Below, one piece after another: positions 4,225 through 63,851 of a DNA stretch of 64,000 nucleotides. Positions within the stretch are counted from its first letter, which is position 1. Every line of letters begins with the position of its first letter. The DNA is taken from positions 146,409 to 210,408 of the IMG/VR virus record IMGVR_UViG_3300046703_000335. The stretch is one strand, 5' to 3'. A program made the position numbers and the translations under genes. Below the pieces are notes generated by a model. The model did no database searches, was not told where the DNA came from, and was given only the letters and a program-made list of their open reading frames with translations.

Positions 4225-4239
4225 ATTAGAAGAGTATTA
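4225..4239 (-). promoter_or_regulatory. Variant copy of 15-bp putative late promoter upstream of sheath
   Basis: Plus strand ATTAGAAGAGTATTA, 3 mismatches to consensus ATTAAGAGATTATTA, about 100 nt upstream of the sheath ATG. Confidence 0.45.
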
Positions 4240-4263
4240 CCAACGACACCAGGACCTGCAATA

Positions 4264-4743
4264 TCAACCTTCTGTAATTGCTCCAGATGATTCAAACTGT
4301 GGTATACCCTTTTTTACTCTATCTGATCTATGCTCCTGTAATGCTTCTGAATATTCTTTTCTTAACGTTCGTTCCTTATTATCTCCCAAGTGCATTATCG
4401 GACTATACTTACCATCCTGATCCTTGGGGATATTAACCTGCTCAGGAGTCTTACCCTTCCATCTCTTCTGCTGCCTAGCCTCATACCGGCTCTTCCATCT
4501 CTCATCGTAACCTTCCCATCTCTTTTCAGATACTTTACCTACGACTTTGTCAATCTCTTTACGAGTAACTATCGTATCTGTTTTAGGATTTAAGTCACTA
4601 TGCACCCCGAATAAAGAAGCCACTTTTCGTTCTGAAACCGTCCCACATCTTTTACAGGATTGCTCCGCATCCCTATCTTTATATGGCACTAATTCTTCAA
4701 ACTCATGACCACAGCCCACACACTTAAATTCATACAACGGCAT
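4264..4743 (-). CDS. FmdB-family zinc-ribbon protein
   Basis: MPLYEFKCVGCGHEFEEL...CKRCG signature. Confidence 0.75.
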   Translation of the reverse strand: MPLYEFKCVGCGHEFEELVPYKDRDAEQSCKRCGTVSERKVASLFGVHSDLNPKTDTIVTRKEIDKVVGKVSEKRWEGYDERWKSRYEARQQKRWKGKTPEQVNIPKDQDGKYSPIMHLGDNKERTLRKEYSEALQEHRSDRVKKGIPQFESSGAITEG

Positions 4744-4789
4744 AAATACTCCTATCTTATGTTATATATGATCTATTAATAGAATTCGT

Positions 4790-4804
4790 ATTAATAGATT
4801 ATCA
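4790..4804 (-). promoter_or_regulatory. Putative late promoter motif copy
   Basis: ATTAATAGATTATCA, 47 nt upstream of ATG 4743. Confidence 0.5.
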
Positions 4805-4839
4805 CCACTTAATGGGGTATATCATACACACCATGGATA

Positions 4840-6273
4840 CTAAAAATATCTAGGATAACCAATTTTGGGATAGGATACCTCAAAGATTGTGCTACTGGGC
4901 TTTAGCATCAATTCAAGTATTCTTCCCTGATTTGTTACGATATAACTCTTATTAGTTACATATCTGTAAATTTTAGTATCAAAATCTACAATCTCAGTCA
5001 GGAATGGAATAAACTTTTTCCATTCTGTCATAATCTGAATATTTATACCATGCCTATAGTATAAATCACCTGTATTCTCATCATATGGTTCCTCTGTTTC
5101 ACCCGTTGCATCCATCTCTTCAATAGTCAAACCTTCATCTATTAATAATAAACGGCGGTTTCCCCATATATCTTCTATTAGATGATCTGTAAGATTTGCC
5201 AGCTGCTGCGGGTCACGTGCCACTACATCAATATCAAAATTCATTTTATAGTGCCCACTATTCATATTTGCAGCAGCTTCCCGCTGAGGATATACAATAA
5301 CGACTACTTTATCTCCCACAGTTATTTCATTACTAAAAGAGAGAATCACCCCAGGAAGAGCCTCATTCACATAATGAAATTCACTGGGTATATTAAAAGG
5401 ACCCATAGTGCTGCCTACCCAGCGATAATTTGCATATAGGGTTGTATTAGCATCAAGAGGCTGTAAAAAAGTTATAAGACCATTTTGATCAATTGTATAG
5501 TCGATACCTTTTTCGAGATATAACTTAGTACTAACATCCATTTTTTTAGTGTAAAGCATATCAAAGTCACCATATAAATTTCCATTTAATAACTGTGCTG
5601 TAGGCTCCATACCTGTGGTTCTATCTATAACTTTTTCATTTTTAACAACATAAAATGGATCAATCACAAATTGCGTAGGAGATATTATCTCAATGTAATA
5701 CCTTCCCGGAGGAGTTAAATTACTATAATAATAAGACACTAAAAGCTGACTACCTAATACTGGGGCCATAGGCAAAGAAAACACACCACTGACACCATCT
5801 AAGAATTCTGGAAGTACTGATTGACCATCTAATAGAACCGAGATCTGCCGGAAATTATCAGCTACTAGCGTATTATTATACCCCGATAATACTGGCTTTC
5901 TTGGGATCTTAAAAAATCTATTAGTCCCTATAGATATTGTACCGGTTATTTGAGATGATAAATCTTCATCTTTTTGATATTTTGTCAAGTTATTAAAATC
6001 TTCCCAAACCCATGCTAAAAACTTTCCTTCAAAATTCTCTGCGTGAGCCATCATGACATGACTCTTCAATACCCCCGCGTGGTCATCAGCAGAGAGCTTT
6101 ATCCTTGATGATGAAGCATTCTTAAGTACGATCGCCATCATGGGTCTTTCTTTGTACGGGAATTTATGAAAAACCTCGACAGGAACTGATCTGAACACTT
6201 GATGTCTTTGTATAGAACCAGTAAGCTCATCCATGACCCGAGATTTAACAACTCTTAATAAATTATTTTCCAT
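4840..6273 (-). CDS. Probable tail completion/terminator-like structural protein with inserted beta domains
   Basis: 477 aa, upstream of sheath; shares a DEDLSSQITG..F....KP module with the sheath insertions; C-terminal MNFDIDVVARDPQQLANLTD resembles tail-terminator folds. Confidence 0.5.
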   Translation of the reverse strand: MENNLLRVVKSRVMDELTGSIQRHQVFRSVPVEVFHKFPYKERPMMAIVLKNASSSRIKLSADDHAGVLKSHVMMAHAENFEGKFLAWVWEDFNNLTKYQKDEDLSSQITGTISIGTNRFFKIPRKPVLSGYNNTLVADNFRQISVLLDGQSVLPEFLDGVSGVFSLPMAPVLGSQLLVSYYYSNLTPPGRYYIEIISPTQFVIDPFYVVKNEKVIDRTTGMEPTAQLLNGNLYGDFDMLYTKKMDVSTKLYLEKGIDYTIDQNGLITFLQPLDANTTLYANYRWVGSTMGPFNIPSEFHYVNEALPGVILSFSNEITVGDKVVVIVYPQREAAANMNSGHYKMNFDIDVVARDPQQLANLTDHLIEDIWGNRRLLLIDEGLTIEEMDATGETEEPYDENTGDLYYRHGINIQIMTEWKKFIPFLTEIVDFDTKIYRYVTNKSYIVTNQGRILELMLKPSSTIFEVSYPKIGYPRYF

Positions 6274-6277
6274 GCCA

Positions 6278-7636
6278 TCACCTATTCTTAATGTCTATTA
6301 TATCCAAATAAAGTTTTGATAATATATTGGGTAGTTCCGTATTTTGATTATAGCCTATTCGTATCAATGGTATTTTGTTTTCTTCACAAAACTTATTTTT
6401 AAGATTATCCCGATATTGCGACTTCTTGAAATTGGCGAGTGCTCTCTCCATAGATATGCCATTGAAACGGACTGGTCGGTAATGCTGTTCACCATCATAC
6501 TCAATTAATGTGTTTATTTCTGGGAGATAGAAATCAAACTGAAGCGGTTTTTTATCAACTTTTAATTCATTAAGCTTATACTGCTGAACAAAACTTATAC
6601 TATTTTCAGTAAACCATTTTTTTATTGCAAGTTCCCCATAAGATATATGGCAATTTGGGCACCTCTGCCCATCTATGTGATTATTTGGTTTCTGCCAGAA
6701 TTCACCATGCTCTCTACATATAATGCATACTTTAGTCCTCGAGTTATAATATTCAACTTTTGAATAATCGTAAATATCCCCATGTATTTCCTTAAATTTA
6801 TTAATACATTCAGATAAAGTATATGAAGCATACCCACATCTTTGACAACCATGCCCTTGTAAAAAAACATGTGCATTCTGATTAAACTCACCATGAATAT
6901 TACAAGTTACTATGACATCTGTAAGTGCATTTATATATCTTGTTTTATCATAGTTGTATTTATCTTTTCCGTATACTTTTATGGCCTTTTTAATAAATTT
7001 TTCCTGAGTCAGAGTACGTTTCTCACCAACTCTATCATACCCGCATTTAGGGCATCCACAACCACTTAAATGGTCGTTTGGGGTCTGATAGAATTTATTA
7101 TGCTTGGGACATATTATTAATAATTTAGAATGAGCATCAATGTACACAGATTTAGAATAATTGTACTTACTACCGTGAATAGAATTAGCTTTATCTACAA
7201 ATTCAGATAGGGTCTGTAGTTTTAGCTTTTTTAATAACTTATTAGCGCACTTTTTACAAATCCTACCCTTAAGATGTCCGTTAGGAGTCTGTAGGAAATC
7301 TCCATGTTCTGGGCAAGTTATTAGGACTTTAGAACCAATACCTGCATAGACAACTTTAGAATAATCATATCTATTACCATGAACTTTAATCGCTTTTTCA
7401 ACAAATTTATCTGTGGTGCAAGTATTAGACTTAGACCTGGACAAATTACCACATGTCGGGCACCCTTTTCCGGATATGTGACTTGAGGGCTTTTGACTAA
7501 AGATTCCATGTTCTGAGCATCTCATATCTATTTTTGTGCGCCAATCTTTATATTCAGATATGGAATAGTCATATCTGCTTCCATGCGTAGCCGTAGCTTT
7601 ATTAATAAATAATTGCGTTTGTTCTGATCTTTCCAT
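6278..7636 (-). CDS. Free-standing homing endonuclease: repeated Zn modules plus C-terminal PD-(D/E)XK (DUF559/Vsr-like) nuclease
   Basis: About five repeats of F..KA..HG..YDYS...Y....K..I.C..HG.F.Q.P..H..G.GCP.C; C-terminal FDFYLPEINTLIEYDGEQHY. Confidence 0.8.
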   Translation of the reverse strand: MERSEQTQLFINKATATHGSRYDYSISEYKDWRTKIDMRCSEHGIFSQKPSSHISGKGCPTCGNLSRSKSNTCTTDKFVEKAIKVHGNRYDYSKVVYAGIGSKVLITCPEHGDFLQTPNGHLKGRICKKCANKLLKKLKLQTLSEFVDKANSIHGSKYNYSKSVYIDAHSKLLIICPKHNKFYQTPNDHLSGCGCPKCGYDRVGEKRTLTQEKFIKKAIKVYGKDKYNYDKTRYINALTDVIVTCNIHGEFNQNAHVFLQGHGCQRCGYASYTLSECINKFKEIHGDIYDYSKVEYYNSRTKVCIICREHGEFWQKPNNHIDGQRCPNCHISYGELAIKKWFTENSISFVQQYKLNELKVDKKPLQFDFYLPEINTLIEYDGEQHYRPVRFNGISMERALANFKKSQYRDNLKNKFCEENKIPLIRIGYNQNTELPNILSKLYLDIIDIKNR

Positions 7637-7662
7637 AAGATATCCTCGACTATAATAAATCT

Positions 7663-7677
7663 ATTAAGGGATTATTA
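7663..7677 (-). promoter_or_regulatory. Putative late promoter motif copy
   Basis: ATTAAGGGATTATTA (1 mismatch), 27 nt upstream of ATG 7636, abutting a terminator. Confidence 0.6.
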
Positions 7678-7710
7678 AAAAAGGCTGAGAGAAGTTATTC
7701 TCCCAGCCCC
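7677..7710 (-). terminator. Rho-independent terminator after actin-like gene
   Basis: Minus strand GGCTGGGAGAA-TAAC-TTCTCTCAGCC followed by TTTTTT. Confidence 0.75.
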
Positions 7711-7758
7711 TTGCAGAAAGCTGTTCTTTCGCAAACAGCTAATTGATCAATATCTTAC

Positions 7759-9509: not shown

Positions 9510-10388
9510 TTAAATGGAATATTTTACAACCGATTTCCAGAAATCATCTTGAGCTTCTTTTGGAATTTTTTCAAATTTAGGAACATTTTTTTTCGGGATT
9601 TCTACGCCTTTTTCATCTATTGGTTCTTCTTCCTCAGAGGTTCCCTCTTCTATAGATTCACCATCTATTACAGGCTCATCCTCAGGGACTGTCTCTTCTA
9701 CGACTGGCTCACCTTCAACAGCACCTTGATCCTCAGGTATTTCTTCATCCTTTGGAGCTACACCATCCTCAGGAGTTTCATCTCCCATTGGAGTTTCAGC
9801 TATTTCAGGTGTCTCATCCTTATCCGAAGTTGCATCACCTTCAGGTTTCTGTTCTTCATCAGGAGTTCCATCATAATCTGATATTTCAGGTGTTTCATCA
9901 GTTTTATCTTCATCAGAAGTTTCTTCATTTTCAGAAGTTTCAGAAACATCTTTATCTTCTTCAGGGTTCACTGCAGTCATGGGAAGAGTGCCATCAATAA
10001 CAGGGGGTTCATCAGTTTTAGGTTCGACTACATCAGAAGTCTCATCCCCCTTATCAGTTCCCTGATCATCAACAGGTTCGAATATATCCGCACCAGTATC
10101 TTCTGTATCATCAGACTCTACATAGTATTTTTCACTTGAGTCTGTAGGAACATAAGACATTTTACCACCACAAGCCAGACATGTTACGGCATCATTCACT
10201 GTAACATTAGCGATACGTTTAACACTATGATTTTTACCAGCAATCTTACGCTTTTTATTAATATCAAGTAATGACGATGTATGATTACATCCATCACAAA
10301 CAAAGAATGTATTATCCGCAGCTTCCTTCTCAAGATCATCAGCGATCTTAAGTAATCTTTCAGCGGCAAGTTTCATATTCGATCCCAT
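9510..10388 (-). CDS. Zinc-finger protein with long acidic tail, probable head-internal protein
   Basis: CDGC..CLACG; Asp/Glu-rich tail; N-terminal LLKIADDLEKEAA tag; ATG 10388 has an AGGAG RBS (track start is 10409). Confidence 0.6.
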   Translation of the reverse strand: MGSNMKLAAERLLKIADDLEKEAADNTFFVCDGCNHTSSLLDINKKRKIAGKNHSVKRIANVTVNDAVTCLACGGKMSYVPTDSSEKYYVESDDTEDTGADIFEPVDDQGTDKGDETSDVVEPKTDEPPVIDGTLPMTAVNPEEDKDVSETSENEETSDEDKTDETPEISDYDGTPDEEQKPEGDATSDKDETPEIAETPMGDETPEDGVAPKDEEIPEDQGAVEGEPVVEETVPEDEPVIDGESIEEGTSEEEEPIDEKGVEIPKKNVPKFEKIPKEAQDDFWKSVVKYSI

Positions 10389-10437
10389 GAAAAGACTCCT
10401 TTGAGGCAAAAGAACTTCTGATAGATTTATATATAAA

Positions 10438-10452
10438 ATTAAGAGATTATTA
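10438..10452 (-). promoter_or_regulatory. Putative late promoter motif, perfect copy
   Basis: ATTAAGAGATTATTA (coding strand TAATAATCTCTTAAT). Confidence 0.7.
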
Positions 10453-15842: not shown

Positions 15843-16145
15843 TTAATAGTTATATACTGCTCTCAGGTATAAGATACCTGTTACACCATGAGAAGTGTTA
15901 TTCATTACATCTTTTATATCCGAATTAGCAAGATTCAAAGCCAACATAGCTGTAGTACCCGGAACATTACTAAATGTAACTCCAAAATCGATACCATACC
16001 GCTGGGCAGGTCCATCAGTAGGATCTACAGCAATATCATAGGCACCATTGGGTCCAGTTGTCGGTGCTGCCCTTAACAGTATTAAGTCATTAGATAGAGG
16101 ACTTACCATACCTGTCAAACCAAAATATTCAACTTCTATAGCCAT
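15843..16145 (-). CDS. Small virion protein with G-x-T-G motifs
   Basis: 100 aa; GPAQRYGIDFGV resembles GPSFNYGTDFTV in the beta-helix protein. Confidence 0.55.
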   Translation of the reverse strand: MAIEVEYFGLTGMVSPLSNDLILLRAAPTTGPNGAYDIAVDPTDGPAQRYGIDFGVTFSNVPGTTAMLALNLANSDIKDVMNNTSHGVTGILYLRAVYNY

Positions 16146-16201
16146 GTGTATTTCACTTTATATGAACTTGTTTATGGAACGCCATTTATTAATATTGCTT
16201 C

Positions 16202-16216
16202 ATAAACAGATTATTA
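16202..16216 (-). promoter_or_regulatory. Putative late promoter motif copy
   Basis: ATAAACAGATTATTA, 57 nt upstream of ATG 16145. Confidence 0.5.
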
Positions 16217-16225: not shown

Positions 16226-16254
16226 TTGAAATACCCGATAATAAGTAGTATTAT
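16226..16254 (+). promoter_or_regulatory. Sigma70-type promoter for the nuclease-Mom fusion
   Basis: TTGAAA-N17-TATTAT, followed by GGAGG RBS and ATG 16287. Confidence 0.6.
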
Positions 16255-16286: not shown

Positions 16287-18422
16287 ATGACAGCAGCACA
16301 AAAAGGTATTACTTTGCTTTTATGGTCTGAACAAGAAGATACACTACTCAAGGAGCTATATTTAAAAACACCTAAAGATATAATATTAACTAAGTTAAAC
16401 AGAACTTGGAAATCTATAAGATATAGGGCTAGTAGACTAAAGTTTAAACGAGACCCATCCATTATAAAACAGGATAATATAGAAGGTACTAAAAAAGCTA
16501 TGCTTGAAAAATATGGTGTAGAATACTCTACCCTTCTACCGGCTATGAAAGAAAAAAGTAGACAAACCAATTTGAAAAAAAGGGGAGTAGAGTATCCTTC
16601 ACAATCCAAAGAAGTTCGTGACAAGATAAAATTAGTAGTAAATGAGAGATATGGTGTAGATAATGTATTTCAGGCACAGAAAATAAAAGAAAAATCTGAA
16701 CAAACTATTTTAAAAAGATATGGAGTAAGATATATAAACCAAAGTCCAACTATTCGAGAGAAAACAAAAGAAACAAATCTTGAAAGATATGGAATATCAA
16801 ATACTTTTCAATTAACAGATAGGGTCGAAAAAGGAATGATTGAAAAGTATGGACAAAGAGTCCCACTTAATGTCCCTGAAATTGCTGAAAAAAAGAAAAA
16901 AACGAGTTTAGAAAAATATGGTGTTGAAGTAGCTTCAAAAAATGAAGCTGTAAAAAGAAAATTATCAGAAACTTTAAAAACTGCTGTCGTTAGAGAAAAA
17001 AAATATCAAGCATTAAAGAAAAAAGGCTCTTTTAATTATTCTAATGAAGAGCTTGCATTCGCTAATTATTTATTAATAGCTGATCCAGACCTTAAAACTC
17101 ATCAGCTTCATCCTATAACAAAACATGTGATAGATTACTATATGCCCAGATATGACTTATGGGTACAATATGACGGAACTTATTGGCACGGTAAGGGAGA
17201 AGCAGTGCATACTGGACCTCAAGCCATATCCATAGAGAAGATAAAAGCAAAAGATATCTATCAGAACGAAAATATTCCAAATTTAATAAGATTCTGGTCA
17301 GATGATGTTAATGAAGCTATAAAAAAAGGCAGCATATTTACTCTTATTGAAATAAAAATAAAAGAAAAGATAAATACTACTGAGGATATATTTGTGTGCC
17401 ACCAGTATCGAAAAAAAATAGAACATTATACTGAAGACCGAGACAATTTACCATTTAACCCAGATAATATCAAAGCATCAAATTTTACGCTTATAAAGGA
17501 GGAACTATCAACAGAGATCGTAGAGTTTATAAAAAAATATGAATGGTTAGAAACTGTTGGAGTTAATCCTAAATGGTGTTTCACAGCTCGATACAATGAT
17601 AAACTTGGAGGAGTAGTCCTAATAAATGAACCTACTGCTTATTCAAAAATGCTGGGTAAAGATACCCCCATCTATGAAGCCCTTATACAAAGAGGTGCTA
17701 CAGCTTCCTGGACCCCTAAAAACCTCGGAAGCAGACTTGTTATGTTCTCTTGTAAGTGGATGGTAGCTAATACCCCAAAACGAATCTTTGTAGGTTATGC
17801 TGATCCTTCTGCTAAAGAACGCGGCATTATCTATCAAGCATGTAATTTTGATTATTTAGGGGATAATTTTGGGAATAGCTACCTATACAAGCACCCTGAA
17901 ATAAATCGAACATTTACATCCCAATATCTAAAAAGAACATCAACATTTAGACGCTGGTGTCTTCTTAATAAAATTGAACTGAGAAAAGAATGGTTTAAAG
18001 AAAATGGGTTTAAGAATTTGGAGATTATACCTCATGAAATTAAAAATATGTGGTATCTCTGGATAAAAGATATAATAAGCAGTGCAGAAAGAATAACTAT
18101 AAGTAAAAAGATGAAATATGCTATTCTACTCTATAGAGATAAAAAAGACAGAAAAATACTTGAACCTTTAAAAAAATATGACAAATTTCCATACAATAAA
18201 ATTTATAACACAACAAACCAGCTAACTCTCCGACCACGCGGAAAAAACAATCATGGCTTAACAGCAGATAGAAAAAATCCAGAAAAAATTGAATTTATAT
18301 TAAAAAATCATAGCACTATGTCCAGGTCAGTTATGGCCCTAGAGTTGAATGAAACTCAACGATGGGTAAAAAGACAAGTAAATAAATTAGTATCTGAGAA
18401 TAAGATTAAGCCAAAGAGATAA
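16287..18422 (+). CDS. Fusion: KYGV-repeat DNA-binding region + PD-(D/E)XK (Vsr/DUF559-like) endonuclease + Mom-like GNAT DNA-modification domain + C-terminal HTH
   Basis: Repeats (E/K)(K/R)YGV...; IDYYMPRYDLWVQYDGTYWHG; FIKKYEWL..RGATASWTPKNLGSRLV..GYADPSAKERGIIYQACNFDYLG; opposite strand to neighbours. Confidence 0.7.
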   Translation: MTAAQKGITLLLWSEQEDTLLKELYLKTPKDIILTKLNRTWKSIRYRASRLKFKRDPSIIKQDNIEGTKKAMLEKYGVEYSTLLPAMKEKSRQTNLKKRGVEYPSQSKEVRDKIKLVVNERYGVDNVFQAQKIKEKSEQTILKRYGVRYINQSPTIREKTKETNLERYGISNTFQLTDRVEKGMIEKYGQRVPLNVPEIAEKKKKTSLEKYGVEVASKNEAVKRKLSETLKTAVVREKKYQALKKKGSFNYSNEELAFANYLLIADPDLKTHQLHPITKHVIDYYMPRYDLWVQYDGTYWHGKGEAVHTGPQAISIEKIKAKDIYQNENIPNLIRFWSDDVNEAIKKGSIFTLIEIKIKEKINTTEDIFVCHQYRKKIEHYTEDRDNLPFNPDNIKASNFTLIKEELSTEIVEFIKKYEWLETVGVNPKWCFTARYNDKLGGVVLINEPTAYSKMLGKDTPIYEALIQRGATASWTPKNLGSRLVMFSCKWMVANTPKRIFVGYADPSAKERGIIYQACNFDYLGDNFGNSYLYKHPEINRTFTSQYLKRTSTFRRWCLLNKIELRKEWFKENGFKNLEIIPHEIKNMWYLWIKDIISSAERITISKKMKYAILLYRDKKDRKILEPLKKYDKFPYNKIYNTTNQLTLRPRGKNNHGLTADRKNPEKIEFILKNHSTMSRSVMALELNETQRWVKRQVNKLVSENKIKPKR

Positions 18423-19579: not shown

Positions 19580-19617
19580 AAGATTGTCTCCCTATAATAT
19601 TACTGTAAGGATTTTAT

Positions 19618-19632
19618 ATTATTAGATTATTA
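19618..19632 (-). promoter_or_regulatory. Putative late promoter motif copy
   Basis: ATTATTAGATTATTA, 39 nt upstream of ATG 19579. Confidence 0.5.
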
Positions 19633-21609: not shown

Positions 21610-21683
21610 AAAAGCCTCCTTAGACTAAATCTTTTTGTTTGTATATAAAACCCTTTATCAGGGATCTTCAATAAAGGTAGCAT

Positions 21684-21698
21684 ATTAAGAGATTATTA
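21684..21698 (-). promoter_or_regulatory. Putative late promoter motif, perfect copy
   Basis: ATTAAGAGATTATTA, 75 nt upstream of ATG 21609. Confidence 0.7.
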
Positions 21699-21705: not shown

Positions 21706-21742
21706 AAAAAAAAAGGCCACTCATTTTATTGAGCAGCCTTTT
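21706..21742 (-). terminator. Terminator after glycosyltransferase gene
   Basis: A9-GGC..CTCA/TGAG..GCC-T5 imperfect hairpin with A/T tails on both sides. Confidence 0.55.
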
Positions 21743-21766
21743 TACATACACGTTTAATAACTGATA

Positions 21767-26104: not shown

Positions 26105-26112
26105 GAAAAGAT

Positions 26113-26127
26113 ATTAAGAGATTATTA
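26113..26127 (-). promoter_or_regulatory. Putative late promoter motif, perfect copy
   Basis: ATTAAGAGATTATTA, 52 nt upstream of ATG 26061. Confidence 0.7.
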
Positions 26128-32888: not shown

Positions 32889-32903
32889 TACACTAAAAAA
32901 AAT

Positions 32904-32918
32904 ATTAATGTATTATTA
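32904..32918 (-). promoter_or_regulatory. Putative late promoter motif copy
   Basis: ATTAATGTATTATTA, next to a terminator. Confidence 0.4.
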
Positions 32919-33748: not shown

Positions 33749-33808
33749 ACTATCTCCACCTTCTATAGTGATTCAATAAACATACACGTCATATCCCTTA
33801 TACGCGAT

Positions 33809-33823
33809 ATTAATAGACTATTA
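33809..33823 (-). promoter_or_regulatory. Putative late promoter motif copy
   Basis: ATTAATAGACTATTA, 61 nt upstream of ATG 33748. Confidence 0.55.
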
Positions 33824-33840: not shown

Positions 33841-33869
33841 TTGTTATGCTCATTCTAAACCAGTATATT
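33841..33869 (+). promoter_or_regulatory. Sigma70-type promoter
   Basis: TTGTTA-N17-TATATT, then AAGGAG RBS and ATG 33899. Confidence 0.5.
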
Positions 33870-37090: not shown

Positions 37091-37119
37091 AGTATACTAT
37101 ATTTTACGCCAATAATCCA
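37091..37119 (-). promoter_or_regulatory. Sigma70-type promoter for the LAGLIDADG-MTase gene
   Basis: TGGATT-N17-TATACT on minus (weak -35), then AGGGGG RBS. Confidence 0.4.
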
Positions 37120-41039: not shown

Positions 41040-41109
41040 GCTTGTCCTCCTGTGTCAATTTATTTATGAAGTTCTAATGAACTTGGTTGTTTTCAGAGAA
41101 AAAACAGAT

Positions 41110-41124
41110 ATTAAGAGATTATTA
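41110..41124 (-). promoter_or_regulatory. Putative late promoter motif, perfect copy (scaffold-decoration-MCP unit)
   Basis: ATTAAGAGATTATTA, 71 nt upstream of ATG 41039. Confidence 0.7.
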
Positions 41125-45659: not shown

Positions 45660-45705
45660 AAATTCCCCAATAAATGGAACGACAAGATGTTATTACAATT
45701 CTAAT

Positions 45706-45720
45706 ATTAATACATTATTA
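45706..45720 (-). promoter_or_regulatory. Putative late promoter motif copy
   Basis: ATTAATACATTATTA, 47 nt upstream of ATG 45659. Confidence 0.5.
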
Positions 45721-50359: not shown

Positions 50360-50398
50360 AAAAGTTCCTTTATCAAAAGCGTATATTCTATTACCAGT

Positions 50399-50413
50399 AA
50401 TAAGAGATTATTA
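50399..50413 (-). promoter_or_regulatory. Putative late promoter motif copy (portal operon)
   Basis: AATAAGAGATTATTA, 40 nt upstream of ATG 50359. Confidence 0.65.
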
Positions 50414-50693: not shown

Positions 50694-50798
50694 TTGAAAA
50701 ATTCATTTTATGAGTATATTCTTTAGATATATCCAATATATAAATTTTTAATATTTATTTAGTTGTTTATTGTTTAACTCATTTTATATAAGTATATT
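50694..50798 (+). promoter_or_regulatory. Two tandem sigma70-type promoters
   Basis: TTGAAA-N17-TATTCT (50694-50722) and TTGTTT-N17-TATATT (50770-50798). Confidence 0.45.
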
Positions 50799-50841: not shown

Positions 50842-51984
50842 ATGAACAAGTTAACTCAAACACTGATGATTGTTCTACTCACAATTCTTCCGGTATTATC
50901 TCAAATTCCTACAAAGGGACTTGTTGCCTGGTTCCCTTTCACCGGGAATTTTGCTGATGAAAGTGGAAACGGGATTGTACTTACTCAAGTAATGGCTCTC
51001 CCTACACTTACTGCTGACCATAATGGTATTGCTAATGCTGCCTACAGTTTTGATGGCTCAAAAAGTGGTTTCAAATATCCTACTTCTGCAAAATTTCCAT
51101 TAGGTAATTCTGATCTTACTATCAGTGCCTGGGTTTATATGCTGAATGGCGGAATACCTAGAGCTTTTACAAGCTGGGGCACCGATACCACAGGGCAAAA
51201 AAAGGAGATAGTATTTTATCAGGCAACTATTAATGATGTTATTTGCCTCGGTGTAACAAACGGAGTAGACTCTGTTACAACAGAATTCCCTGGAAATCCT
51301 GGTGGAAAGTGGTTACATGTTGCTGTATCGGTAAAATCTGGTAATGCTAAATTATATATCAATGGCATCTTGGGTGTATCAAAAGCAATAACTTTCAACA
51401 TTCAGAATGGTACATTAGGTGGAGCAGCATTCGGTATTGGAACTGATATGACTAATGCCTATTATGGTGATAATTATTTTGGAGGATCTCTTGATGATAT
51501 TTCGATATATAACAGAGCTCTTACCGATCAAGAGATTCTTTATGTTAAAAATTGCAAATCAACAAAAAATTCTGCACCGACATTCACTTCTATACCTTCC
51601 GCTACAGCTAATATTGCAGTTCAATATAACTATAATATAATTACTACTGATATCGAAAATCAGGCTGTTACAATAGCTCTTAAAGCTAACCCTTCTGGTA
51701 TGACTCTTGTTAACGGAAAAATATCATGGACACCAGAAAAAAGTCAAGTTGGAAAAAATTCTATCACTATCGTTGCTAAGGATGTTACAGGAGATTCAAC
51801 AATTCAAAGTTTTGAAGTAACAGTAACTCCATCGACTTCAGTTATACAAAAAGTTATTAACCCAAGACTTTCAAATAAGTCGACAAGCACTCTTTTTTAT
51901 CTCCCAAATGGTCAGGCTTGTGTTAATAAAAATTTTAGTGGTTTAAGATTGATTAATAACATGAAACAGTTAATTGTACGATAA
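50842..51984 (+). CDS. Secreted LamG + Ig-like (He_PIG/cadherin-like) protein, moron-like
   Basis: ATG 50842 with GGAG RBS; signal peptide; GLVAWFPFTGN..D.SGNG; KWLHVAV..LYING; GSLDDISIYNRALT; PSGMTL..G.ISWTP. Confidence 0.8.
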   Translation: MNKLTQTLMIVLLTILPVLSQIPTKGLVAWFPFTGNFADESGNGIVLTQVMALPTLTADHNGIANAAYSFDGSKSGFKYPTSAKFPLGNSDLTISAWVYMLNGGIPRAFTSWGTDTTGQKKEIVFYQATINDVICLGVTNGVDSVTTEFPGNPGGKWLHVAVSVKSGNAKLYINGILGVSKAITFNIQNGTLGGAAFGIGTDMTNAYYGDNYFGGSLDDISIYNRALTDQEILYVKNCKSTKNSAPTFTSIPSATANIAVQYNYNIITTDIENQAVTIALKANPSGMTLVNGKISWTPEKSQVGKNSITIVAKDVTGDSTIQSFEVTVTPSTSVIQKVINPRLSNKSTSTLFYLPNGQACVNKNFSGLRLINNMKQLIVR

Positions 51985-56111: not shown

Positions 56112-59100
56112 TTATCTCGAGAATCTATTCCCACTACTCATACCAGAAAATCTTGAGGATGGTCTATTTAAACTAAATTTACTCATCTCAGATTTTCTTA
56201 ACATCCTAGCCATCCTCAAATGTCCTACAGCAGCTGACCCTGCTATATTATGTGTAAATGACTTATTTCTATATTCATGAGCGATATACACCATACGAGC
56301 AAGACTATCACTTAAGTCATCGTGCTCTCCTTCTCTTTCTGGAGCTGCTACTTGTACGATATATTTAGATTTCTGTTGAGCCTGCAAAGTCAAAAGTTCT
56401 GTAACAAGTATAGAATCTGTAGATCTTATACCTTTTACAAATACTTCATCACCTTCAGGTATTCTTAATATCCTGGATAGTAAACATGACAAAAGCATTT
56501 GATATACGGAAGAATTAAGACTGTCATTAAAGTGTCTTGCTTCAAACTGCTTAAGTCCTAATCTATGAAGCTTAGGTTCCATAGTCATATCATAGTACTG
56601 ATCAAACAAACCTTTAGCTATGTAAAACTTTTTAGTGAAAGATGCTATCCAATCCACCATTTCTTCTGGTTCAAAATATTCCTTACCTTCATCTTTGGCG
56701 AATCTTATACCATAGTAGTCAATTTCAAGCTTATCAACTTTTACCCCTTCAACTAATTCCTGTATCCAATGACCTATAGTTATGGCAGTACCATCCTTTT
56801 TTAATCCTAAATCTACTCCCATAAAATGAGGTACACGTTGCATACTTCGATCTTTTATTTTAAGACCAGGTATAACATTTCTTCTTACAATTTCTGGATC
56901 ATCTAACCAGCCAAACATACGATCGCTGAACTGAGCACCATATTCTGATTTAAAAGTTATAGGGTTAGCACTATAACTATTCTTTAGAAATTGTGTAGAG
57001 AGATCGGGATCAACTTCCCATGTTGGAGCCTGCATCATAAATAAATCTTCATTTTCCTCTTCAAAAGATCGTTCATATTCCTTGAAGAATTTTCCAGTCA
57101 TAGGCCCAGGAGAAGACAAACAAATAATTTTTCCATCTGGCGTACCATCAGGTTTTTTAAACTTAGCGACAGATGGTGTAGCTGCTTTATATATCGCCCC
57201 ATCATCCCTGTCTTTATTACTGGTTACACCGCCACCCTTTTCGTCTGCGAAAAAGAATGCCATCTCATCAAGAGCCACGACGATATTACCTGGACCACGA
57301 AGACCCTTCGCACTACACGGTGCTACTCGAATATTTATAGATGCCAAACCCTTTGGACCATACTTATCAAGATCTCTCTGGGTATGTAAATAGACATATT
57401 GCTGTGTGGGTTTTCTTCGATATTTACGAAAAAATTCAGATCGTTCTATATGACCCACGATCTTTGTAAATAGTTCACTGGCTGTATCTTTACTAGTAGA
57501 TATGCATGTTACTTTTATAGTATCTTCTGGCATGATCCCATAGTATTCTTGAGGGCAATATTTATTTAGCAATTTATAAACTTCATAGGCTATAATACAA
57601 GACGTGATTGTCGAGTTATGATTAGTCATGCCATTAGCTACGAATGACTCTCCATCAGGTACATTTAAATCATAAACTTTACATTCTCCAGACTCAGTGC
57701 TTACAACTTTATCCCAGTAATAATTCGCATTATATATTTCTTCAAAATGATTTATTAGTAGTATATCAGCATTAGCGTCTTTTACCTTATCTAATACATT
57801 TTTTAACCTTGGGTAAGTCATTTGCTCATTACAGTTTTTTATAACATTCCCCAGAGCATCTTTAATCCTTGTACGATGACGATCTCCACTCCCTTTACCA
57901 TTTATATTGAACTGACCATTAGGTACAGAATCTCTTAATTTTCTACACCATTCTTTTTGATTAGGTATAGATTCGGTAGAACTCTTATTACCCTGATAAC
58001 CCTTTAGTATATATTCATTTAATAAAGATTGCTTTCTATCACTTAAAAAGCCTATCTCCTTATTAAATATATTCATTGAGTTAGAACCTATGATATTTAT
58101 ATGACAATAAACTTTATTATATTTTTTATTAGTCCGATATCTTATTCTACATACAATGCCAAAATTTAATAAAAGAAGTTGTACTTCCTGAGCTAATCTT
58201 TTACTTGCAGTTGAAAAAGAAATAACTCTATTACCCTCAAAGCAACCATCTGTTTCAAATAAACCTTTTAGAAACGCAGCTACTACTCTCTTCGGAGACT
58301 GCATGATAACCCATGGTATTCGTTTATTATCAGATTTTGCATCTAAATTATACCCTATCTTATCAAGAAAACTTCTTAGTAGCATTGAATAATAACACAC
58401 TCTATAGTATCTATTTTTACGATAGCAATTAACACTTGGAGTACCCACGGACTTTTCGAATATATCCTTTACTTTTTCTAACCACTCAGGATAAGGGCCC
58501 ACCGTTACTTGGATACCGTTTTCATTACCCCAAGTTCCATCCCCAACAAGTACTCCTAATAATGTAGCCCAATTCTCATCTATGATATTAGGAAGGTTAT
58601 ATTCTTTGATGTTAACTTTATTTTCAAGTACTAAATTTTCATGAAATTTTTTCAAGGAAATATTCTCTATAGGCCACAGATCAGTCTTTCTATTTATACC
58701 TATATAATCCCCTATCTTAATATCTTCTAAGTATCTCCATTGAATAATACCTTCTTCAGACATAACCTTAATTCGATGATTGGGGGTTCCTTCCTCTTCA
58801 AAACCACAATAACTAACTACTCTGATAGTTTTCCTTACCCCACCATTATAAAAATAAGCAGAAGAAGATCTTTTACCCATTTCTTGAACGACAGTCTCAA
58901 TAAGAGGCTGATATTCCGGTCCATCAGGATTACCCAGCTTTTGAATCTCTATAAAACCTCTACCAGTATTAATTAATGTATCCCCTGTTAAGCACTTTCC
59001 AGAACGCCGCCCGCACACTAAAACCATGTTAGGATACATCTGACCTTGTTCATATAGTCTGTTGATCCTGCCTTCATTGAACAAAAACATCATGTATTCC

Positions 59101-59360
59101 TGTTCATTGAATCGATAGAGTTCAACTTCATTAAACTGATCATTTACTATGATATCTCTATTTGCAGAATTATCAAGTTCAAGACCATAATATGATTTTA
59201 TGATAAATCTTTGAGCGGGGTAAAGAGCTGGAACGTCACTATTGCAACCCATGGCAAGACCCCAGGGTGCTGTAATAAAATCTATAACATTTTTATCAAG
59301 ATATTCTTTATTTTCGCCTCTCGGAGAAATGAGATTAGCACATAGTTCAGATAAGCTCAT
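56112..59360 (-). CDS. terL: Terminase large subunit, intein-containing; about 622 aa after splicing
   Basis: Walker A CGRRSGK|S, Walker B VVALDEMAFF, LSSP coupling motif, RNase-H nuclease GVDLG..HDDLSDS. Confidence 0.92.
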   Translation of the reverse strand: MSLSELCANLISPRGENKEYLDKNVIDFITAPWGLAMGCNSDVPALYPAQRFIIKSYYGLELDNSANRDIIVNDQFNEVELYRFNEQEYMMFLFNEGRINRLYEQGQMYPNMVLVCGRRSGKCLTGDTLINTGRGFIEIQKLGNPDGPEYQPLIETVVQEMGKRSSSAYFYNGGVRKTIRVVSYCGFEEEGTPNHRIKVMSEEGIIQWRYLEDIKIGDYIGINRKTDLWPIENISLKKFHENLVLENKVNIKEYNLPNIIDENWATLLGVLVGDGTWGNENGIQVTVGPYPEWLEKVKDIFEKSVGTPSVNCYRKNRYYRVCYYSMLLRSFLDKIGYNLDAKSDNKRIPWVIMQSPKRVVAAFLKGLFETDGCFEGNRVISFSTASKRLAQEVQLLLLNFGIVCRIRYRTNKKYNKVYCHINIIGSNSMNIFNKEIGFLSDRKQSLLNEYILKGYQGNKSSTESIPNQKEWCRKLRDSVPNGQFNINGKGSGDRHRTRIKDALGNVIKNCNEQMTYPRLKNVLDKVKDANADILLINHFEEIYNANYYWDKVVSTESGECKVYDLNVPDGESFVANGMTNHNSTITSCIIAYEVYKLLNKYCPQEYYGIMPEDTIKVTCISTSKDTASELFTKIVGHIERSEFFRKYRRKPTQQYVYLHTQRDLDKYGPKGLASINIRVAPCSAKGLRGPGNIVVALDEMAFFFADEKGGGVTSNKDRDDGAIYKAATPSVAKFKKPDGTPDGKIICLSSPGPMTGKFFKEYERSFEEENEDLFMMQAPTWEVDPDLSTQFLKNSYSANPITFKSEYGAQFSDRMFGWLDDPEIVRRNVIPGLKIKDRSMQRVPHFMGVDLGLKKDGTAITIGHWIQELVEGVKVDKLEIDYYGIRFAKDEGKEYFEPEEMVDWIASFTKKFYIAKGLFDQYYDMTMEPKLHRLGLKQFEARHFNDSLNSSVYQMLLSCLLSRILRIPEGDEVFVKGIRSTDSILVTELLTLQAQQKSKYIVQVAAPEREGEHDDLSDSLARMVYIAHEYRNKSFTHNIAGSAAVGHLRMARMLRKSEMSKFSLNRPSSRFSGMSSGNRFSR
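57615..58994 (-). mobile_element. Intein (460 aa) with LAGLIDADG endonuclease in the TerL Walker A motif
   Basis: Starts CLTGDTLINT; GTPNHRI; LLGVLVGDG and LKGLFETDG; ends FVANGMTNHN followed by Ser. Confidence 0.92.
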
Positions 59361-62036: not shown

Positions 62037-62037
62037 G

Positions 62038-62691
62038 TTATTTATCTCCTTTTGCTATATTTGCCATGATTCTTTTACTGAGGACAGAAGCTACTTTATC
62101 TTTAACATTACCATTAACAAGATCGCCATATCTCTTAAAAGCATCTACCTCAAATGAGTTTACAACATCGTCAGGATTAATATCTTCCAAAGGTGTTTTA
62201 TTAACTTCAGGGGGAAGATCTGTATTATCCGTGTCAGAAGTATTTTTACCAGGAACTACTTCCTCAACTTCTTGAATTTCTTCTTCAACAATCTCATTTT
62301 CCTGCTTTACTTTTTTCTTATCAGAATCACTTAAACCCCACTTAGGATTTGTAAGCTCATCTGCAAGAGTATCTGTCACATCAGACAATTCCGTAATAGC
62401 TGTATTGATCTTAGCTTTCACATCTTTGAAAGGCATAATAAAACCCCGACCACCCAGCATCCCATCGGGAGTAATATCCGATCCTCTGAGAATAGATAAA
62501 TCTTTCATGGCTGAGATCATTGTACCAAGAGAGACATTGATATTATGGAGTGCCTTTTTAAGTACTGTAGCTTTAGAAGGATCATACTCAAACCCTCTAA
62601 TATCCCTACTCATACCACCTTTATTTTCTTTTCTTTTTTCTGCGGCTTTTTCAGCAGCAGCTACTCGCATGGTTAAACGATCTCTGCTCAT
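62038..62691 (-). CDS. Hypothetical head-associated protein
   Basis: MSRDRLTMRVAA start resembles scaffold MSRNRLTNRLAS; PDGMLGGRGFIM. Confidence 0.55.
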   Translation of the reverse strand: MSRDRLTMRVAAAEKAAEKRKENKGGMSRDIRGFEYDPSKATVLKKALHNINVSLGTMISAMKDLSILRGSDITPDGMLGGRGFIMPFKDVKAKINTAITELSDVTDTLADELTNPKWGLSDSDKKKVKQENEIVEEEIQEVEEVVPGKNTSDTDNTDLPPEVNKTPLEDINPDDVVNSFEVDAFKRYGDLVNGNVKDKVASVLSKRIMANIAKGDK

Positions 62692-62696
62692 TTTAT

Positions 62697-63365
62697 TTAT
62701 CCTTTAATTGGGTCACCGGTGTTATCAAAAAGTCTTTTGATCTGGACGTTTCCATCTTTATCGGAATCAATAGTCCACAAATCATGAGTACATTTGTGTA
62801 TAAGCTGATTACTTCCTATTCGATCAAATGAAAAGAGATCGTCAAGACTTGCTACTTTCATTCTGCTCTCATCAAAGAAAGGATCAATACCATTTTCGGA
62901 AGCTACTGAAATGATTGATGCTGATTTTATTGTCTGATGAAGATTATTAAAAACTCCATTAATAATATTCTTGTCAAAATCTCCACTGCTTGACAACTTT
63001 TGTACTACTGCTTTTACAGCCATTTCATATCTGTCTGACATAGAAGCACTCCTATTATCTATAGAAAATCCTGGGCATCTTTTTTCAAACTTTTTAGGAA
63101 AATCAGCACACTGTTCTGGTTTAACATCCCATATGCTGCATTTATTGTCTTTAAGAAAAACACATGATGAGGAATTTGGCTTATTTCTTAGTACAATATT
63201 TGTCTTATACTTTCTTGTATGTTCTTCTAAAAACTTTTCTTTATTAACAAACTGATAATCAGCTATCCTGTTAATGTCGTCAGGAGTAAGCAGAACTACA
63301 CCTTCCCACTTACAGCAAGCTCCACATTTTTTACACTCAAACTCTTTCCCATCAATTACTCTCAT
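62697..63365 (-). CDS. YkgJ/CxxCxxCC metal-cluster domain fused to an unknown C-terminal domain
   Basis: FECKKCGACC...CVFL..NKCSIWDVKPEQCADFP. Confidence 0.75.
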   Translation of the reverse strand: MRVIDGKEFECKKCGACCKWEGVVLLTPDDINRIADYQFVNKEKFLEEHTRKYKTNIVLRNKPNSSSCVFLKDNKCSIWDVKPEQCADFPKKFEKRCPGFSIDNRSASMSDRYEMAVKAVVQKLSSSGDFDKNIINGVFNNLHQTIKSASIISVASENGIDPFFDESRMKVASLDDLFSFDRIGSNQLIHKCTHDLWTIDSDKDGNVQIKRLFDNTGDPIKG

Positions 63366-63374
63366 AAATCACTT

Positions 63375-63776
63375 TTAAAAAGGATTAAAGTTAAGTTCAT
63401 CTGGATCAAATCCAATAGTATCTTTATTCTCATTAAGTCCATCAGGAGTTGTACTATCATTTACAGGCTCACCCTGTACATTTTCAAAATGCCCTCCAGG
63501 ATTAGTATCAATCATTGGTCTGGAGTTATAATCCATCCAATCAACTGGAGTTGGTCTTTCTCCTTGCCTACGGATATCCTCTACATTCTTACATTTGTCT
63601 TCTTTGTCTGTATCATTGTACATACTTGGAGGACCATCACCAATTTCTTTAGAATCCTCTTCAGGCTCTGTTTGTTGTTGATAATAAGGGATATTCATAT
63701 ACGGGGAATCACCGGAATAGTTATCATCCACCATAAAGGCTAATTTTCTTATCCGGTCAGAGAAGCTTATAAACAT
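63375..63776 (-). CDS. Acidic hypothetical protein with N-terminal helical tag
   Basis: MFISFSDRIRKLAFMVDD. Confidence 0.55.
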   Translation of the reverse strand: MFISFSDRIRKLAFMVDDNYSGDSPYMNIPYYQQQTEPEEDSKEIGDGPPSMYNDTDKEDKCKNVEDIRRQGERPTPVDWMDYNSRPMIDTNPGGHFENVQGEPVNDSTTPDGLNENKDTIGFDPDELNFNPF

Positions 63777-63836
63777 ACATACCCCTACAAAAAGATAACA
63801 TTACTGCATAATGTAAAACCTAAGTGTAGGTATAGT

Positions 63837-63851
63837 ATTAAGAGATTATTA
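63837..63851 (-). promoter_or_regulatory. Putative late promoter motif, perfect copy
   Basis: ATTAAGAGATTATTA, 61 nt upstream of ATG 63776. Confidence 0.7.

What the first reader, a model, noticed from the sequence alone, without database searches (positions are those of the whole stretch)
4225..63851. 15-bp motif TAATAATCTCTTAAT repeated 15 times: probable phage-specific late promoter
Seen on the plus strand as ATTAAGAGATTATTA: perfect at 10438, 21684, 26113, 41110 and 63837; variants at 4225, 4790, 7663, 16202, 19618, 32904, 33809, 45706, 50399 and 50651. Every copy I found has the same orientation, lies 16-101 nt upstream of a minus-strand start codon, and several follow a terminator directly. 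No -35 element accompanies it. The three plus-strand genes and the LAGLIDADG-MTase instead have sigma70-like promoters. Inference: two promoter classes, with the late one read by a phage sigma factor or RNA polymerase; it does not match the T4 late TATAAATA.
Basis: partly seen in the sequence, partly recalled or inferred. Interest (0 to 1): 0.6.

Follow-up and report, generated by a model that had tools for sequence, protein, structure and literature searches.

The report
Huge-phage structural-gene promoter motif
A 17-base signal, TAATAATCTnTTAATAy, sits in front of about 25 gene groups of an uncultivated peat "huge phage" and is almost certainly the phage's own promoter for its particle-building genes; this is a new sequence but an ordinary kind of phage control element.

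Summary
All 15 reported copies exist, all in the orientation of the minus-strand genes, and none was missed.

- **Consensus and excess over chance.** The real consensus is 17 nt, TAATAATCTnTTAATAy. In the whole 210-kb contig, 29 sense sites score at least 14 bits. Twenty-five of them lie in the 4.7% of DNA that is intergenic; 22 lie wholly inside it, against 0.08 expected.
- **Conservation.** Three relatives at about 72-90% nucleotide identity keep the motif at orthologous sites, at the same distance from the start codon, while the upstream flank is scrambled.
- **Orientation.** In a two-armed relative (G006) the motif follows gene orientation on both strands.
- **Second class.** A bipartite sigma70-type promoter, TTTAAA-N16-GTATATT, serves the DNA-metabolism and tRNA arm. 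It also serves the replication operon, the phage's RpoD-like sigma gene, and the window's plus-strand genes and methyltransferase.
- **Candidate factor.** The gene ending at 63854 is the tail of a conserved 208-aa "minimal sigma" (a sigma-70 region 4 helix-turn-helix plus an unknown C-terminal domain). The first motif copy follows it in six phages.
- **No phage polymerase.** No phage RNA polymerase was detected by Pfam.

Best reading: a single-block promoter for structural and packaging genes, read by host RNA polymerase redirected by a phage factor. No transcription start data exist. I class it as a new member of a known kind, of moderate interest.

The parts
63835..63851 (-). Class-B promoter motif, 25.3 bits. 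It starts 2 nt after the stop codon of the minimal-sigma gene and heads the operon 63776 -> terminase (56112-59360) -> 52016.
   Evidence: orthologous sites in G003 and L144
50649..50665 (-). Class-B motif, 22.4 bits, 58 nt before the start of ORF 50411-50590.
50397..50413 (-). Class-B motif, 21.9 bits. It heads the small ORFs 50150-50359 and 49833-50150, followed by the portal gene 46404-49829.
45704..45720 (-). Class-B motif, 19.8 bits. It heads 45243-45659 and the genes down to the prohead protease 41137-43989.
41108..41124 (-). Class-B motif, 25.4 bits, 68 nt before ORF 40032-41039. The motif and the whole leader are conserved in three relatives.
33807..33823 (-). Class-B motif, 20.3 bits, before ORF 32990-33748. 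It lies in a divergent intergenic region shared with the + gene at 33899.
32902..32918 (-). Weak class-B motif, 14.2 bits, 13 nt before ORF 32172-32888, directly after the terminator at 32928-32958.
26111..26127 (-). Class-B motif, 25.4 bits. It heads 25885-26061 and the 1373-aa glycosyltransferase 21767-25888. The leader forms a strong hairpin.
21682..21698 (-). Class-B motif, 25.4 bits, before ORF 21184-21609, directly after the terminator at 21710-21743.
19616..19632 (-). Class-B motif, 19.8 bits, before ORF 19373-19579.
16200..16216 (-). Weak class-B motif, 14.4 bits, before ORF 15843-16145, in a divergent intergenic region.
10436..10452 (-). Class-B motif, 22.8 bits, 26 nt before ORF 9510-10409.
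7661..7677 (-). Class-B motif, 20.1 bits, before the HNH homing-endonuclease gene 6278-7636. It directly follows a strong terminator hairpin (about 7678-7712).
4788..4804 (-). Class-B motif, 21.4 bits, TGATAATC variant, before ORF 4264-4743. The same variant is kept in G002 and G003.
4223..4239 (-). Class-B motif, 18.4 bits, TAATACTCTTCTAATAT variant, 98 nt before the tail sheath gene 1191-4124.
63854..64000 (-). Last 48 codons plus the stop codon of the 'minimal sigma' gene. The family is 208 aa: a Sigma70_r4 helix-turn-helix plus a conserved C-terminal domain. It is the candidate specificity factor.
33863..33869 (+). Class-A (sigma70-type) -10 element GTATATT, 29 nt before the + gene at 33899. 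Conserved in G003.
50792..50798 (+). Class-A -10 element GTATATT before the + strand virion-protein-like gene. Conserved in G003. A second copy lies at 50714-50720.
16248..16254 (+). Class-A-like -10 element GTATTAT, with TTGAAA 17 nt upstream, before the + gene at 16287 (homing endonuclease + Mom-like).
37091..37097 (-). Class-A-like -10 element GTATACT before the LAGLIDADG/HNH-methyltransferase gene 34476-37058, after the terminator at 37151-37178.

Best explanation
The motif is a phage-specific promoter, called class B here. It is one contiguous block of 17 bp, TAATAATCTnTTAATAy, with no -35 partner. It starts the transcription units that hold the particle and packaging genes (sheath, portal, protease, terminase) and some homing-endonuclease and small genes.

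**Inferred mechanism.**
1. Early and replication genes are transcribed from bipartite sigma70-type promoters (class A, TTTAAA-N16-GTATATT). These are read by the host primary sigma, the phage's RpoD-like sigma, or both.
2. One product of that phase is a phage specificity factor. It redirects the host core RNA polymerase to class B.
3. The leading candidate for that factor is the 208-aa 'minimal sigma'. Its gene closes the replication operon and ends 2 nt before the first class-B site.
4. The 3' half of the motif, TAATAy, probably acts as the -10-like melting element. Transcription would then begin a few nucleotides downstream of the motif.

**Shown:** sequence, statistics, position, orientation, conservation, the existence of two classes, and the gene repertoire.

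**Inferred:** promoter activity, timing, start site, and the identity of the reading factor.
For: **Statistics.** 22 sites lie wholly inside intergenic DNA against 0.08 expected. Sense versus antisense is 29 to 3 at 14 bits or more.

**Position.**
- Sites lie 12-103 nt before start codons.
- Some follow strong terminators, and some sit in divergent intergenic regions where no upstream same-strand gene can supply a transcript.
- The shortest spacings (12-15 nt) rule out a -35-type role.

**Orientation.** In G006, which has two gene arms, 22 forward and 11 reverse sites follow gene orientation, and 29 of 33 are intergenic.

**Phylogenetic footprint.** This rests on 25 orthologous pairs at about 72% coding identity.
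- Motif positions 1-9 and 12-17 are 84-100% identical.
- Positions 10-11 are about 50% identical.
- The upstream flank is about 35% identical, which is random.
- The leader is 50-75% identical.
- The distance to ATG is kept within 1 nt in most pairs.

**A separate class A.**
- 37 intergenic GTATATT sites were found, and 25 have a 5/6 or better -35 match at 16-18 nt.
- Class A sits before the sigma operon, before both divergent operons of G006, and before the replication operon in L144.
- The 10 kb of replication genes in L144 have no class-B site. The first one follows the minimal-sigma stop codon in G000, G003, L144, L147, L151 and L152.

**Gene repertoire.**
- The minimal sigma has Sigma70_r4 at 6.6e-12. 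Structural matches of Z 8-10 are to sigma domain 4 only.
- An RpoD-like sigma is present in G004 and G006.
- No Rpb1 or T7-type RNA polymerase match was found in G000, G006 or the 98%-complete G004, and no Rpb2 match in G000.
- This repertoire matches published 'group 2' jumbo phages, which have sigma factors of minimal and RpoD-like types and no RNA polymerase (PMC7824862).
Against: - There is no transcript 5'-end or expression-timing evidence. No RNA run holds this phage.
- The contig is only about 45% of a genome. The lineage's own other half, where a polymerase could lie, was not seen.
- Pfam models can miss very divergent phage polymerases of the phiKZ or crAss type.
- The recognition helix of the minimal sigma is invariant across the family. 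Yet the distant relatives G004 and G005 carry only a diverged or rare version of the motif. This weakens a simple one-factor, one-motif link.
- A protein with sigma region 4 but no region 2 is not known to recognise a -10-proximal element.
- The motif also occurs before non-structural genes, so 'late' may be too narrow.
Confidence: 0.6

Rival explanations
1. The motif is a promoter, but it is read by a phage-encoded RNA polymerase. This would be a single-subunit T7-like enzyme or a divergent multisubunit one, encoded in the unseen half of the genome.
For: - A contiguous block of about 17 bp without a -35 element is the architecture of T7-type promoters.
- Only 45% of the genome is in hand.
- Divergent phage polymerases often escape Pfam.
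Against: - No PF00940 or PF00623 match was found in G000, G006 (258 kb, has the motif) or G004 (98% complete), and no PF00562 match in G000.
- There is no base preference at the position just after the motif, whereas T7-type enzymes favour G at +1.
- The clade encodes two sigma-type proteins, which makes sense only if it uses the host core enzyme.
Confidence: 0.1
2. The motif is a promoter read by an unmodified host holoenzyme, either the host primary sigma using it as an unusual extended -10 or a host alternative sigma. No phage factor is needed.
For: - The 3' half, TAATAy, resembles a -10 hexamer.
- The host is unknown, and promoter consensus in the candidate host group (FCB bacteria) is poorly known.
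Against: - Within the same phages a distinct, canonical bipartite class exists with a different -10 (GTATATT) and a -35. The two classes are partitioned by gene module.
- 17 conserved contiguous positions far exceed what a -10 element needs.
- The motif is kept across phages whose G+C, and probably host, differ.
Confidence: 0.12
3. The motif is not a promoter. It would be a binding site for a phage DNA-binding regulator (operator or activator box next to a weak promoter), or an RNA-level signal such as a processing site or translational operator.
For: - The motif contains two TAATA words 11 bp apart, about one helical turn. This would suit a protein with two DNA-binding domains such as the minimal sigma.
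- Conserved leaders could also reflect RNA-level control.
Against: - No second conserved element such as a -10 lies at a fixed distance downstream. An activator box would therefore have no promoter to activate.
- Some sites lie directly after terminators or in divergent regions, where an RNA-level signal would not be transcribed from upstream.
- Leaders show no shared structure: mean z is -1 and only 1 of 18 is below -4.
- The upstream flank is unconserved.
Confidence: 0.08

Closest known systems
Phage phiEco32 / 7-11 middle-late promoters read by the phage sigma gp36 (consensus tAATGTAtA; PMC4331800)
   Same: - A single conserved block near -10 with no -35.
- Structural genes are driven by the phage-specific class, and the first part of the 'functional' cluster by bacterial-type promoters.
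- The phage sigma gene sits in the functional cluster.
   Different: - The sequence is different and the block is about twice as long (17 nt against 9).
- The phage here is a roughly 460-kb myovirus-type huge phage.
- The candidate factor has region 4 only, whereas gp36 is a sigma with region 2.
- Nothing has been tested experimentally.
T4 late promoters (TATAAATA) with gp55, gp33 and the gp45 clamp
   Same: - A single AT-rich element without a -35.
- It is used for morphogenesis genes.
- The specificity proteins are made together with the replication genes. Here the minimal-sigma gene lies in an operon with clamp loader, primase and flap endonuclease.
   Different: - The motif does not contain TATAAATA and is 17 nt long.
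- No gp55 or gp33 homologue was looked for or found.
- A clamp link was tried by complex prediction and gave no verdict.
'Group 2' jumbo phages of Iyer et al. 2021 (PMC7824862): no RNA polymerase, a minimal one-HTH sigma plus an RpoD-like sigma
   Same: The same repertoire is seen in this clade: a 208-aa Sigma70_r4 protein, an RpoD-like sigma of 297-314 aa, and no polymerase hit.
   Different: - That paper, in the passages read, describes proteins and reports no promoter motif for them.
- Membership of this clade in group 2 was not tested (capsid and DNA polymerase markers were not examined).
- The minimal sigma here has an extra conserved domain of about 110 aa.
T7-group promoters (about 17-23 bp contiguous, read by single-subunit RNA polymerase)
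   Same: A contiguous conserved block of similar length directly before the transcribed region, AT-rich at the 5' end, and often placed after terminators.
   Different: No T7-like polymerase was detected. There is no conserved initiating G, and the sequence is unrelated.
RinA/ArpU-type late activators of Gram-positive siphophages (PMC3152322, abstract seen)
   Same: A small phage protein acts on a promoter region situated upstream of terS, at the head of the late (packaging and morphogenesis) operon. This parallels the minimal-sigma gene lying just before the first class-B site.
   Different: - There is one late promoter per genome there, against about 25 or more here.
- No RinA or ArpU family appeared among the 25 best of 45 NCBIfam matches to the 208-aa protein.
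- The sigma-like nature of these activators, and the position of their gene, are from memory and were not checked.

Membership tests
Canonical bipartite sigma70-type promoter | A -35 hexamer 16-18 bp upstream of a -10 hexamer | tested here: not met
   No column upstream of the motif exceeds 0.3 bits in 44 instances. The two halves of the motif are only 4 bp apart. The same genomes contain a true bipartite class, TTTAAA-N16-GTATATT, for comparison.
T4-type late promoter | The TATAAATA element at -10 | tested here: not met
   The consensus TAATAATCTnTTAATAy does not contain TATAAATA.
T4-type late promoter | gp55/gp33 homologues and clamp dependence | not tested
   No gp55 or gp33 profile was searched. 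The complex prediction of the minimal-sigma tail with a putative beta clamp gave no verdict.
T7-group (single-subunit RNA polymerase) promoter | A cognate T7-like RNA polymerase gene in the phage | tested here: inconclusive
   PF00940 found nothing in G000-G008, including the 98%-complete G004. However, the control genomes cannot ring for this family, G000 is 45% complete, and G004 carries only a diverged motif.
phiKZ/AR9-type promoters of phage multisubunit RNA polymerases | Phage beta/beta'-like genes | tested here: inconclusive
   PF00562 in G000 and PF00623 in six relatives gave no hit at E<=1. These enzymes are very divergent and the lineage's genome is incomplete.
Phage-sigma-dependent single-element promoter (phiEco32 type) | One conserved block close to the start site, without a -35, placed before middle/late genes | tested here: met
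   Downstream genes are sheath, portal, protease and terminase.
Phage-sigma-dependent single-element promoter (phiEco32 type) | A phage-encoded sigma that reads it | not testable with these tools
   Sigma-type genes are present: a Sigma70_r4 protein next to the first site and an RpoD-like sigma in relatives. Which one binds the motif, if either, needs biochemistry.
Sigma-70 family (for the 208-aa protein) | Region 2 (core binding and -10 recognition) together with region 4 | tested here: not met
   Only Sigma70_r4 and r4_2 are found. A six-frame search for Sigma70_r2 in G000 found nothing. The fold matches cover residues 30-96 only. The protein is a region-4 protein, not a complete sigma.

The most novel reading that the evidence does not exclude
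The 208-aa 'minimal sigma' is itself the specificity subunit for the 17-bp promoters. It has a sigma region 4 helix-turn-helix plus a conserved C-terminal domain of unknown fold, and no region 2. Promoter recognition and opening by host core polymerase would then happen without any sigma region 2, or through a split sigma whose second half is still unidentified. The two TAATA words 11 bp apart might each be read by one of its two domains.
Probability: 0.2. Interest if true: 0.7.

Novelty: new member of a known kind. Interest (0 to 1): 0.4.

Why it matters
**Regulatory map.** Huge phages are known almost only from metagenomes, and their gene regulation is unstudied. This result gives one peat and sediment clade a concrete two-class promoter map. 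That map lets operons and likely temporal classes be drawn from sequence alone.

**A testable candidate.** It points to a specific protein family of 359 or more members as a candidate transcription specificity factor. It also supplies short, portable promoter sequences for in vitro tests.

**Limits.** The finding does not change general understanding. Phage-specific promoter classes and phage sigma factors are textbook matters.

Tried and rejected
- **Nearest annotated phage.** Megablast of 12 kb against GenBank phages gave no match. A protein search with the sheath found only a 33%-identical uncultured 485-kb phage and Tunturiibacter phage Tunturi_5.
- **Exact 15-mer scan of IMG/VR.** A few contigs with two or more sites were not followed up.
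- **tRNA idea.** A GGTTCGA-like word just upstream of the last motif suggested a tRNA. ARAGORN finds none, and the stretch is coding sequence.
- **Consensus sigma70 scan.** Hits were at chance level (109 against 87±10, and 55 against 66±9), so it gives no evidence by itself.
- **G004-specific 16-mer.** The sequence after the minimal-sigma gene in G004 (CCCGATCGGGTATATT, two copies) does not recur elsewhere, so it is a local duplication and not a promoter class.
- **Leader structure.** Leaders share no common fold.
- **Clamp tether.** I asked whether the conserved disordered tail of the minimal sigma binds the phage's putative beta clamp, as in T4. The prediction scored 0.00, which is no verdict and counts neither for nor against.
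- **Walking the JGI contig.** The 194-kb JGI contig of a close relative is not held for whole-record search. Stepwise walking would have cost too many look-ups.
- **RNA reads.** No RNA run holds the phage.
- **Not needed.** No alternative genetic code was used.

Full report
**What the window is.** The window is the last 64 kb of a 210,408-bp IMG/VR virus contig (G000), rated about 45% complete. Of its ORFs, 172 of 184 are on the minus strand, and coding density is 95%. Window genes include:
- a tail sheath (1191-4124);
- a multi-domain glycosyltransferase (21767-25888);
- a prohead protease, a portal and a large terminase, each interrupted by an intein;
- a LAGLIDADG/HNH-methyltransferase.

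The window is therefore the morphogenesis arm of a huge phage. The DNA occurs in peat and freshwater-sediment metagenomes, and no RNA run holds it. No close relative is in GenBank phages.

**The observation.**
- Aligning intergenic instances from three genomes extends the motif to 17 nt, TAATAATCTnTTAATAy. Position 10 is free, position 16 is mostly A, and there is no information upstream.
- In G000, 29 sense sites reach 14 bits, and 25 of them lie in the 4.7% of DNA that is intergenic. There are 3 antisense sites, and 1.3 per strand are expected.
- Against a null matched to the AT-rich intergenic composition, 22 are observed and 0.08 expected. The reversed matrix finds nothing. A matrix trained only on two relatives finds 26 sense (22 intergenic) and 5 antisense sites.

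**Is it a promoter?**

*Position.* The motif ends 12-103 nt before a start codon. The shortest spacings exclude a -35-like role. Four of the 25 sites (three in the window: 7663, 21684, 32904) come straight after strong intrinsic terminators. Others sit in divergent intergenic regions (16200, 33807). In both situations a new transcript must start there.

*Orientation.* Inside G000 the uniform orientation is confounded by the uniform gene strand. Relative G006 (258,580 bp) has a minus arm and a plus arm. There, 22 forward and 11 reverse sites each face their downstream gene, including five forward sites before isolated plus-strand genes in the minus arm. Of the 33, 29 are intergenic.

*Conservation.* G001 (about 90% identical), G002 and G003 (about 72%) are syntenic with G000. 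They carry the motif at the orthologous intergenic sites. Over 25 orthologous pairs:
- motif positions 1-9 and 12-17 are 84-100% identical;
- positions 10-11 are about 50% identical;
- the upstream flank is about 35% identical, which is random;
- the downstream leader is 50-75% identical;
- the distance to the ATG is kept within 1 nt in most pairs.

This sharp 5' boundary is what a promoter followed by a transcribed leader predicts. The best-site search biases the motif columns, but not the flank contrast or the spacing. More distant members of the clade keep the motif. The 49%-GC phage G004 has a diverged form, GATACTCTTCTCATTTT, at three intergenic sites. That form resembles the sheath variant in this window.

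**A second promoter class.** After masking the motif, the most enriched intergenic word not explained by tRNA genes or ribosome-binding sites is GTATATT.
- In context it is the -10 of a bipartite sigma70-type promoter, TTTAAA-N16-GTATATT. Of 37 intergenic instances in G006 and G000, 25 have a 5/6 or better -35 at 16-18 nt.
- In G006, 18 lie in the minus arm in gene orientation. That arm encodes topoisomerase, a CCA-adding/poly(A) polymerase-like enzyme, NAD synthase, ribonucleotide reductase, RecA, a RecD2 helicase and tRNAs.
- Class A also heads both divergent operons at the arm junction. This includes the replication operon that contains the minimal-sigma gene. It also heads the operon of the RpoD-like sigma.
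- In the close relative L144 the replication operon starts with a class-A promoter and contains no class-B site for 10 kb.
- In the window, GTATATT or one-off variants precede the plus-strand genes at 33899, about 50840 and 16287, and the methyltransferase. Two of these are conserved in G003.

The generic consensus scan alone would not have shown it.

**Who reads class B?**

*The neighbouring gene.* The gene that ends at 63854, 2 nt before the first motif, is cut by the contig end. Its orthologue in G003 is a protein of 208-216 aa with a Sigma70_r4 domain at residues 50-97 (E 6.6e-12, above the Pfam cut-off) and nothing else recognisable.

*Its family.* The family has at least 359 members in metagenomes. 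They have nearly constant length, an invariant recognition helix, and an equally conserved C-terminal half. The AlphaFold model (pLDDT 75) matches only sigma domain 4 and YlxM-like proteins over residues 30-96 (Z 8-10). The C-terminal domain has only weak, non-specific helix-turn-helix-like matches.

*Its position.* It always lies at the end of an operon with clamp-loader subunits, a primase-like protein and a flap endonuclease. In six phages the first class-B site follows it.

*Other transcription genes.* Relatives G004 (98% complete) and G006 also encode a 297-314-aa RpoD/RpoS-like sigma. Its nearest proteins are the short primary sigmas of Fibrobacter, Ignavibacteria and Bacteroidota at 46-49% identity. 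No RNA polymerase domain was detected in any of these records.

*Published parallel.* This repertoire matches the 'group 2' jumbo phages: sigma factors of a minimal and an RpoD-like type, and no polymerase (PMC7824862).

*Reading.* The RpoD-like sigma is the natural reader of the canonical class A. Class B then needs another specificity determinant, and the minimal sigma is the best-placed candidate. This last step is inference.

Two points against it:
- A region-4-only protein is not known to read a -10-proximal element.
- Its recognition helix is invariant even in phages where the motif has drifted.

**How it most likely works.**
1. Class-A promoters drive the early and replication genes, including the two sigma-type genes.
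2. A phage factor then directs host core polymerase to the 17-bp class-B blocks scattered through the morphogenesis arm.
3. Each block starts an operon. The four operons identified are:
   - 63835 to terminase;
   - 50397 to portal;
   - 45704 to protease;
   - 4223 to sheath.
4. The TAATAy 3' half plausibly serves as the melted -10-like element, with the start site a few bases downstream.

The closest worked example is phiEco32/7-11. There a phage sigma reads a single tAATGTAtA block before the structural genes, while bacterial-type promoters serve the early cluster (PMC4331800).

**Rivals and confidence.** Three rivals remain: an undetected phage polymerase, the unmodified host holoenzyme, and a non-promoter binding site or RNA signal. 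Each is weighed in its own section. I put the promoter function at about 0.85. The full statement, including dependence on a phage factor, I put at 0.6. The minimal sigma as that factor I put at about 0.35.

**Novelty.** The sequence and the clade are new. The kind of element is well known. The minimal-sigma family with its extra domain is the more interesting lead.

**Limits.**
- There are no RNA data.
- The genome is incomplete.
- The host is unknown.
- Gene calls were made by a simple longest-ORF rule, so a few start codons and 'in-gene' labels are approximate.

Noticed in passing
window 41137-43989, 46404-49829, 56112-59360 (all minus strand): The prohead protease, portal and large terminase genes each carry a Hint/LAGLIDADG intein. 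The terminase of relative L144 is only 622 aa, apparently without the intein.
   Followed up: partly
window 34476-37058 (-): One 860-aa ORF combines HNH and LAGLIDADG endonuclease parts with a DNA methyltransferase part. It has its own terminator-plus-class-A-like promoter. Blastn found no orthologous region in G001-G003, so it is probably a mobile insertion.
   Followed up: partly
window 16287-18422 (+): A plus-strand ORF fuses homing-endonuclease repeats to a Mom-like DNA-modification domain. Together with the 1373-aa glycosyltransferase at 21767-25888, this hints at modified DNA.
   Followed up: no
G000 outside the window, + coordinates about 51,521-51,921 and 63,433-63,508 (minus strand): ARAGORN predicts a tmRNA and a tRNA-Ile(TAT) in the contig. 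The tmRNA is directly preceded by a GTATATT -10 element.
   Followed up: no
window 26060-26110 (-), leader after the motif at 26111-26127: The leader forms a perfect 13-bp hairpin (dG -17.2, z -6.1 against shuffles) just before the ribosome-binding site. Other leaders lack such structure.
   Followed up: partly
window 32341-32357 (+ orientation, inside ORF 32172-32888): This is a 20-bit copy of the motif in the antisense direction inside a gene. It is not conserved in G003, so it is probably chance or coding-driven.
   Followed up: yes
L156:4855-5799:- (G006) and L154:1030-1923:- (G004): The phage RpoD-like sigma is closest (46-49% identity) to the short ~284-aa primary sigmas of Fibrobacter, Ignavibacteria and Bacteroidota, a lead to the host group. 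One minimal-sigma homologue is filed in an Exilispira MAG. In L181 the neighbours include ribosomal protein S21 and HPr genes.
   Followed up: partly
L142:2754-3413:- (G003) and L144:8389-9036:+: A conserved protein of about 215 aa lies between the clamp loader and the flap endonuclease, just before the minimal sigma. It has no Pfam or PHROG match and only a sub-threshold NCBIfam hit (TraY, E 0.0027).
   Followed up: no
G000 outside the window (oriented 178572; + coordinates 31820-31836): A 17-bit sense copy of the motif lies inside a 1989-nt ORF and could be an internal promoter. The contig also has giant ORFs of up to 3,401 aa.
   Followed up: no
IMG/VR loci L018, L036, L084, L096, L120 and others: Other viral contigs hit by the exact 15-mer carry two or more strong motif sites within a few kb. 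They may be further members of this promoter-sharing clade.
   Followed up: no
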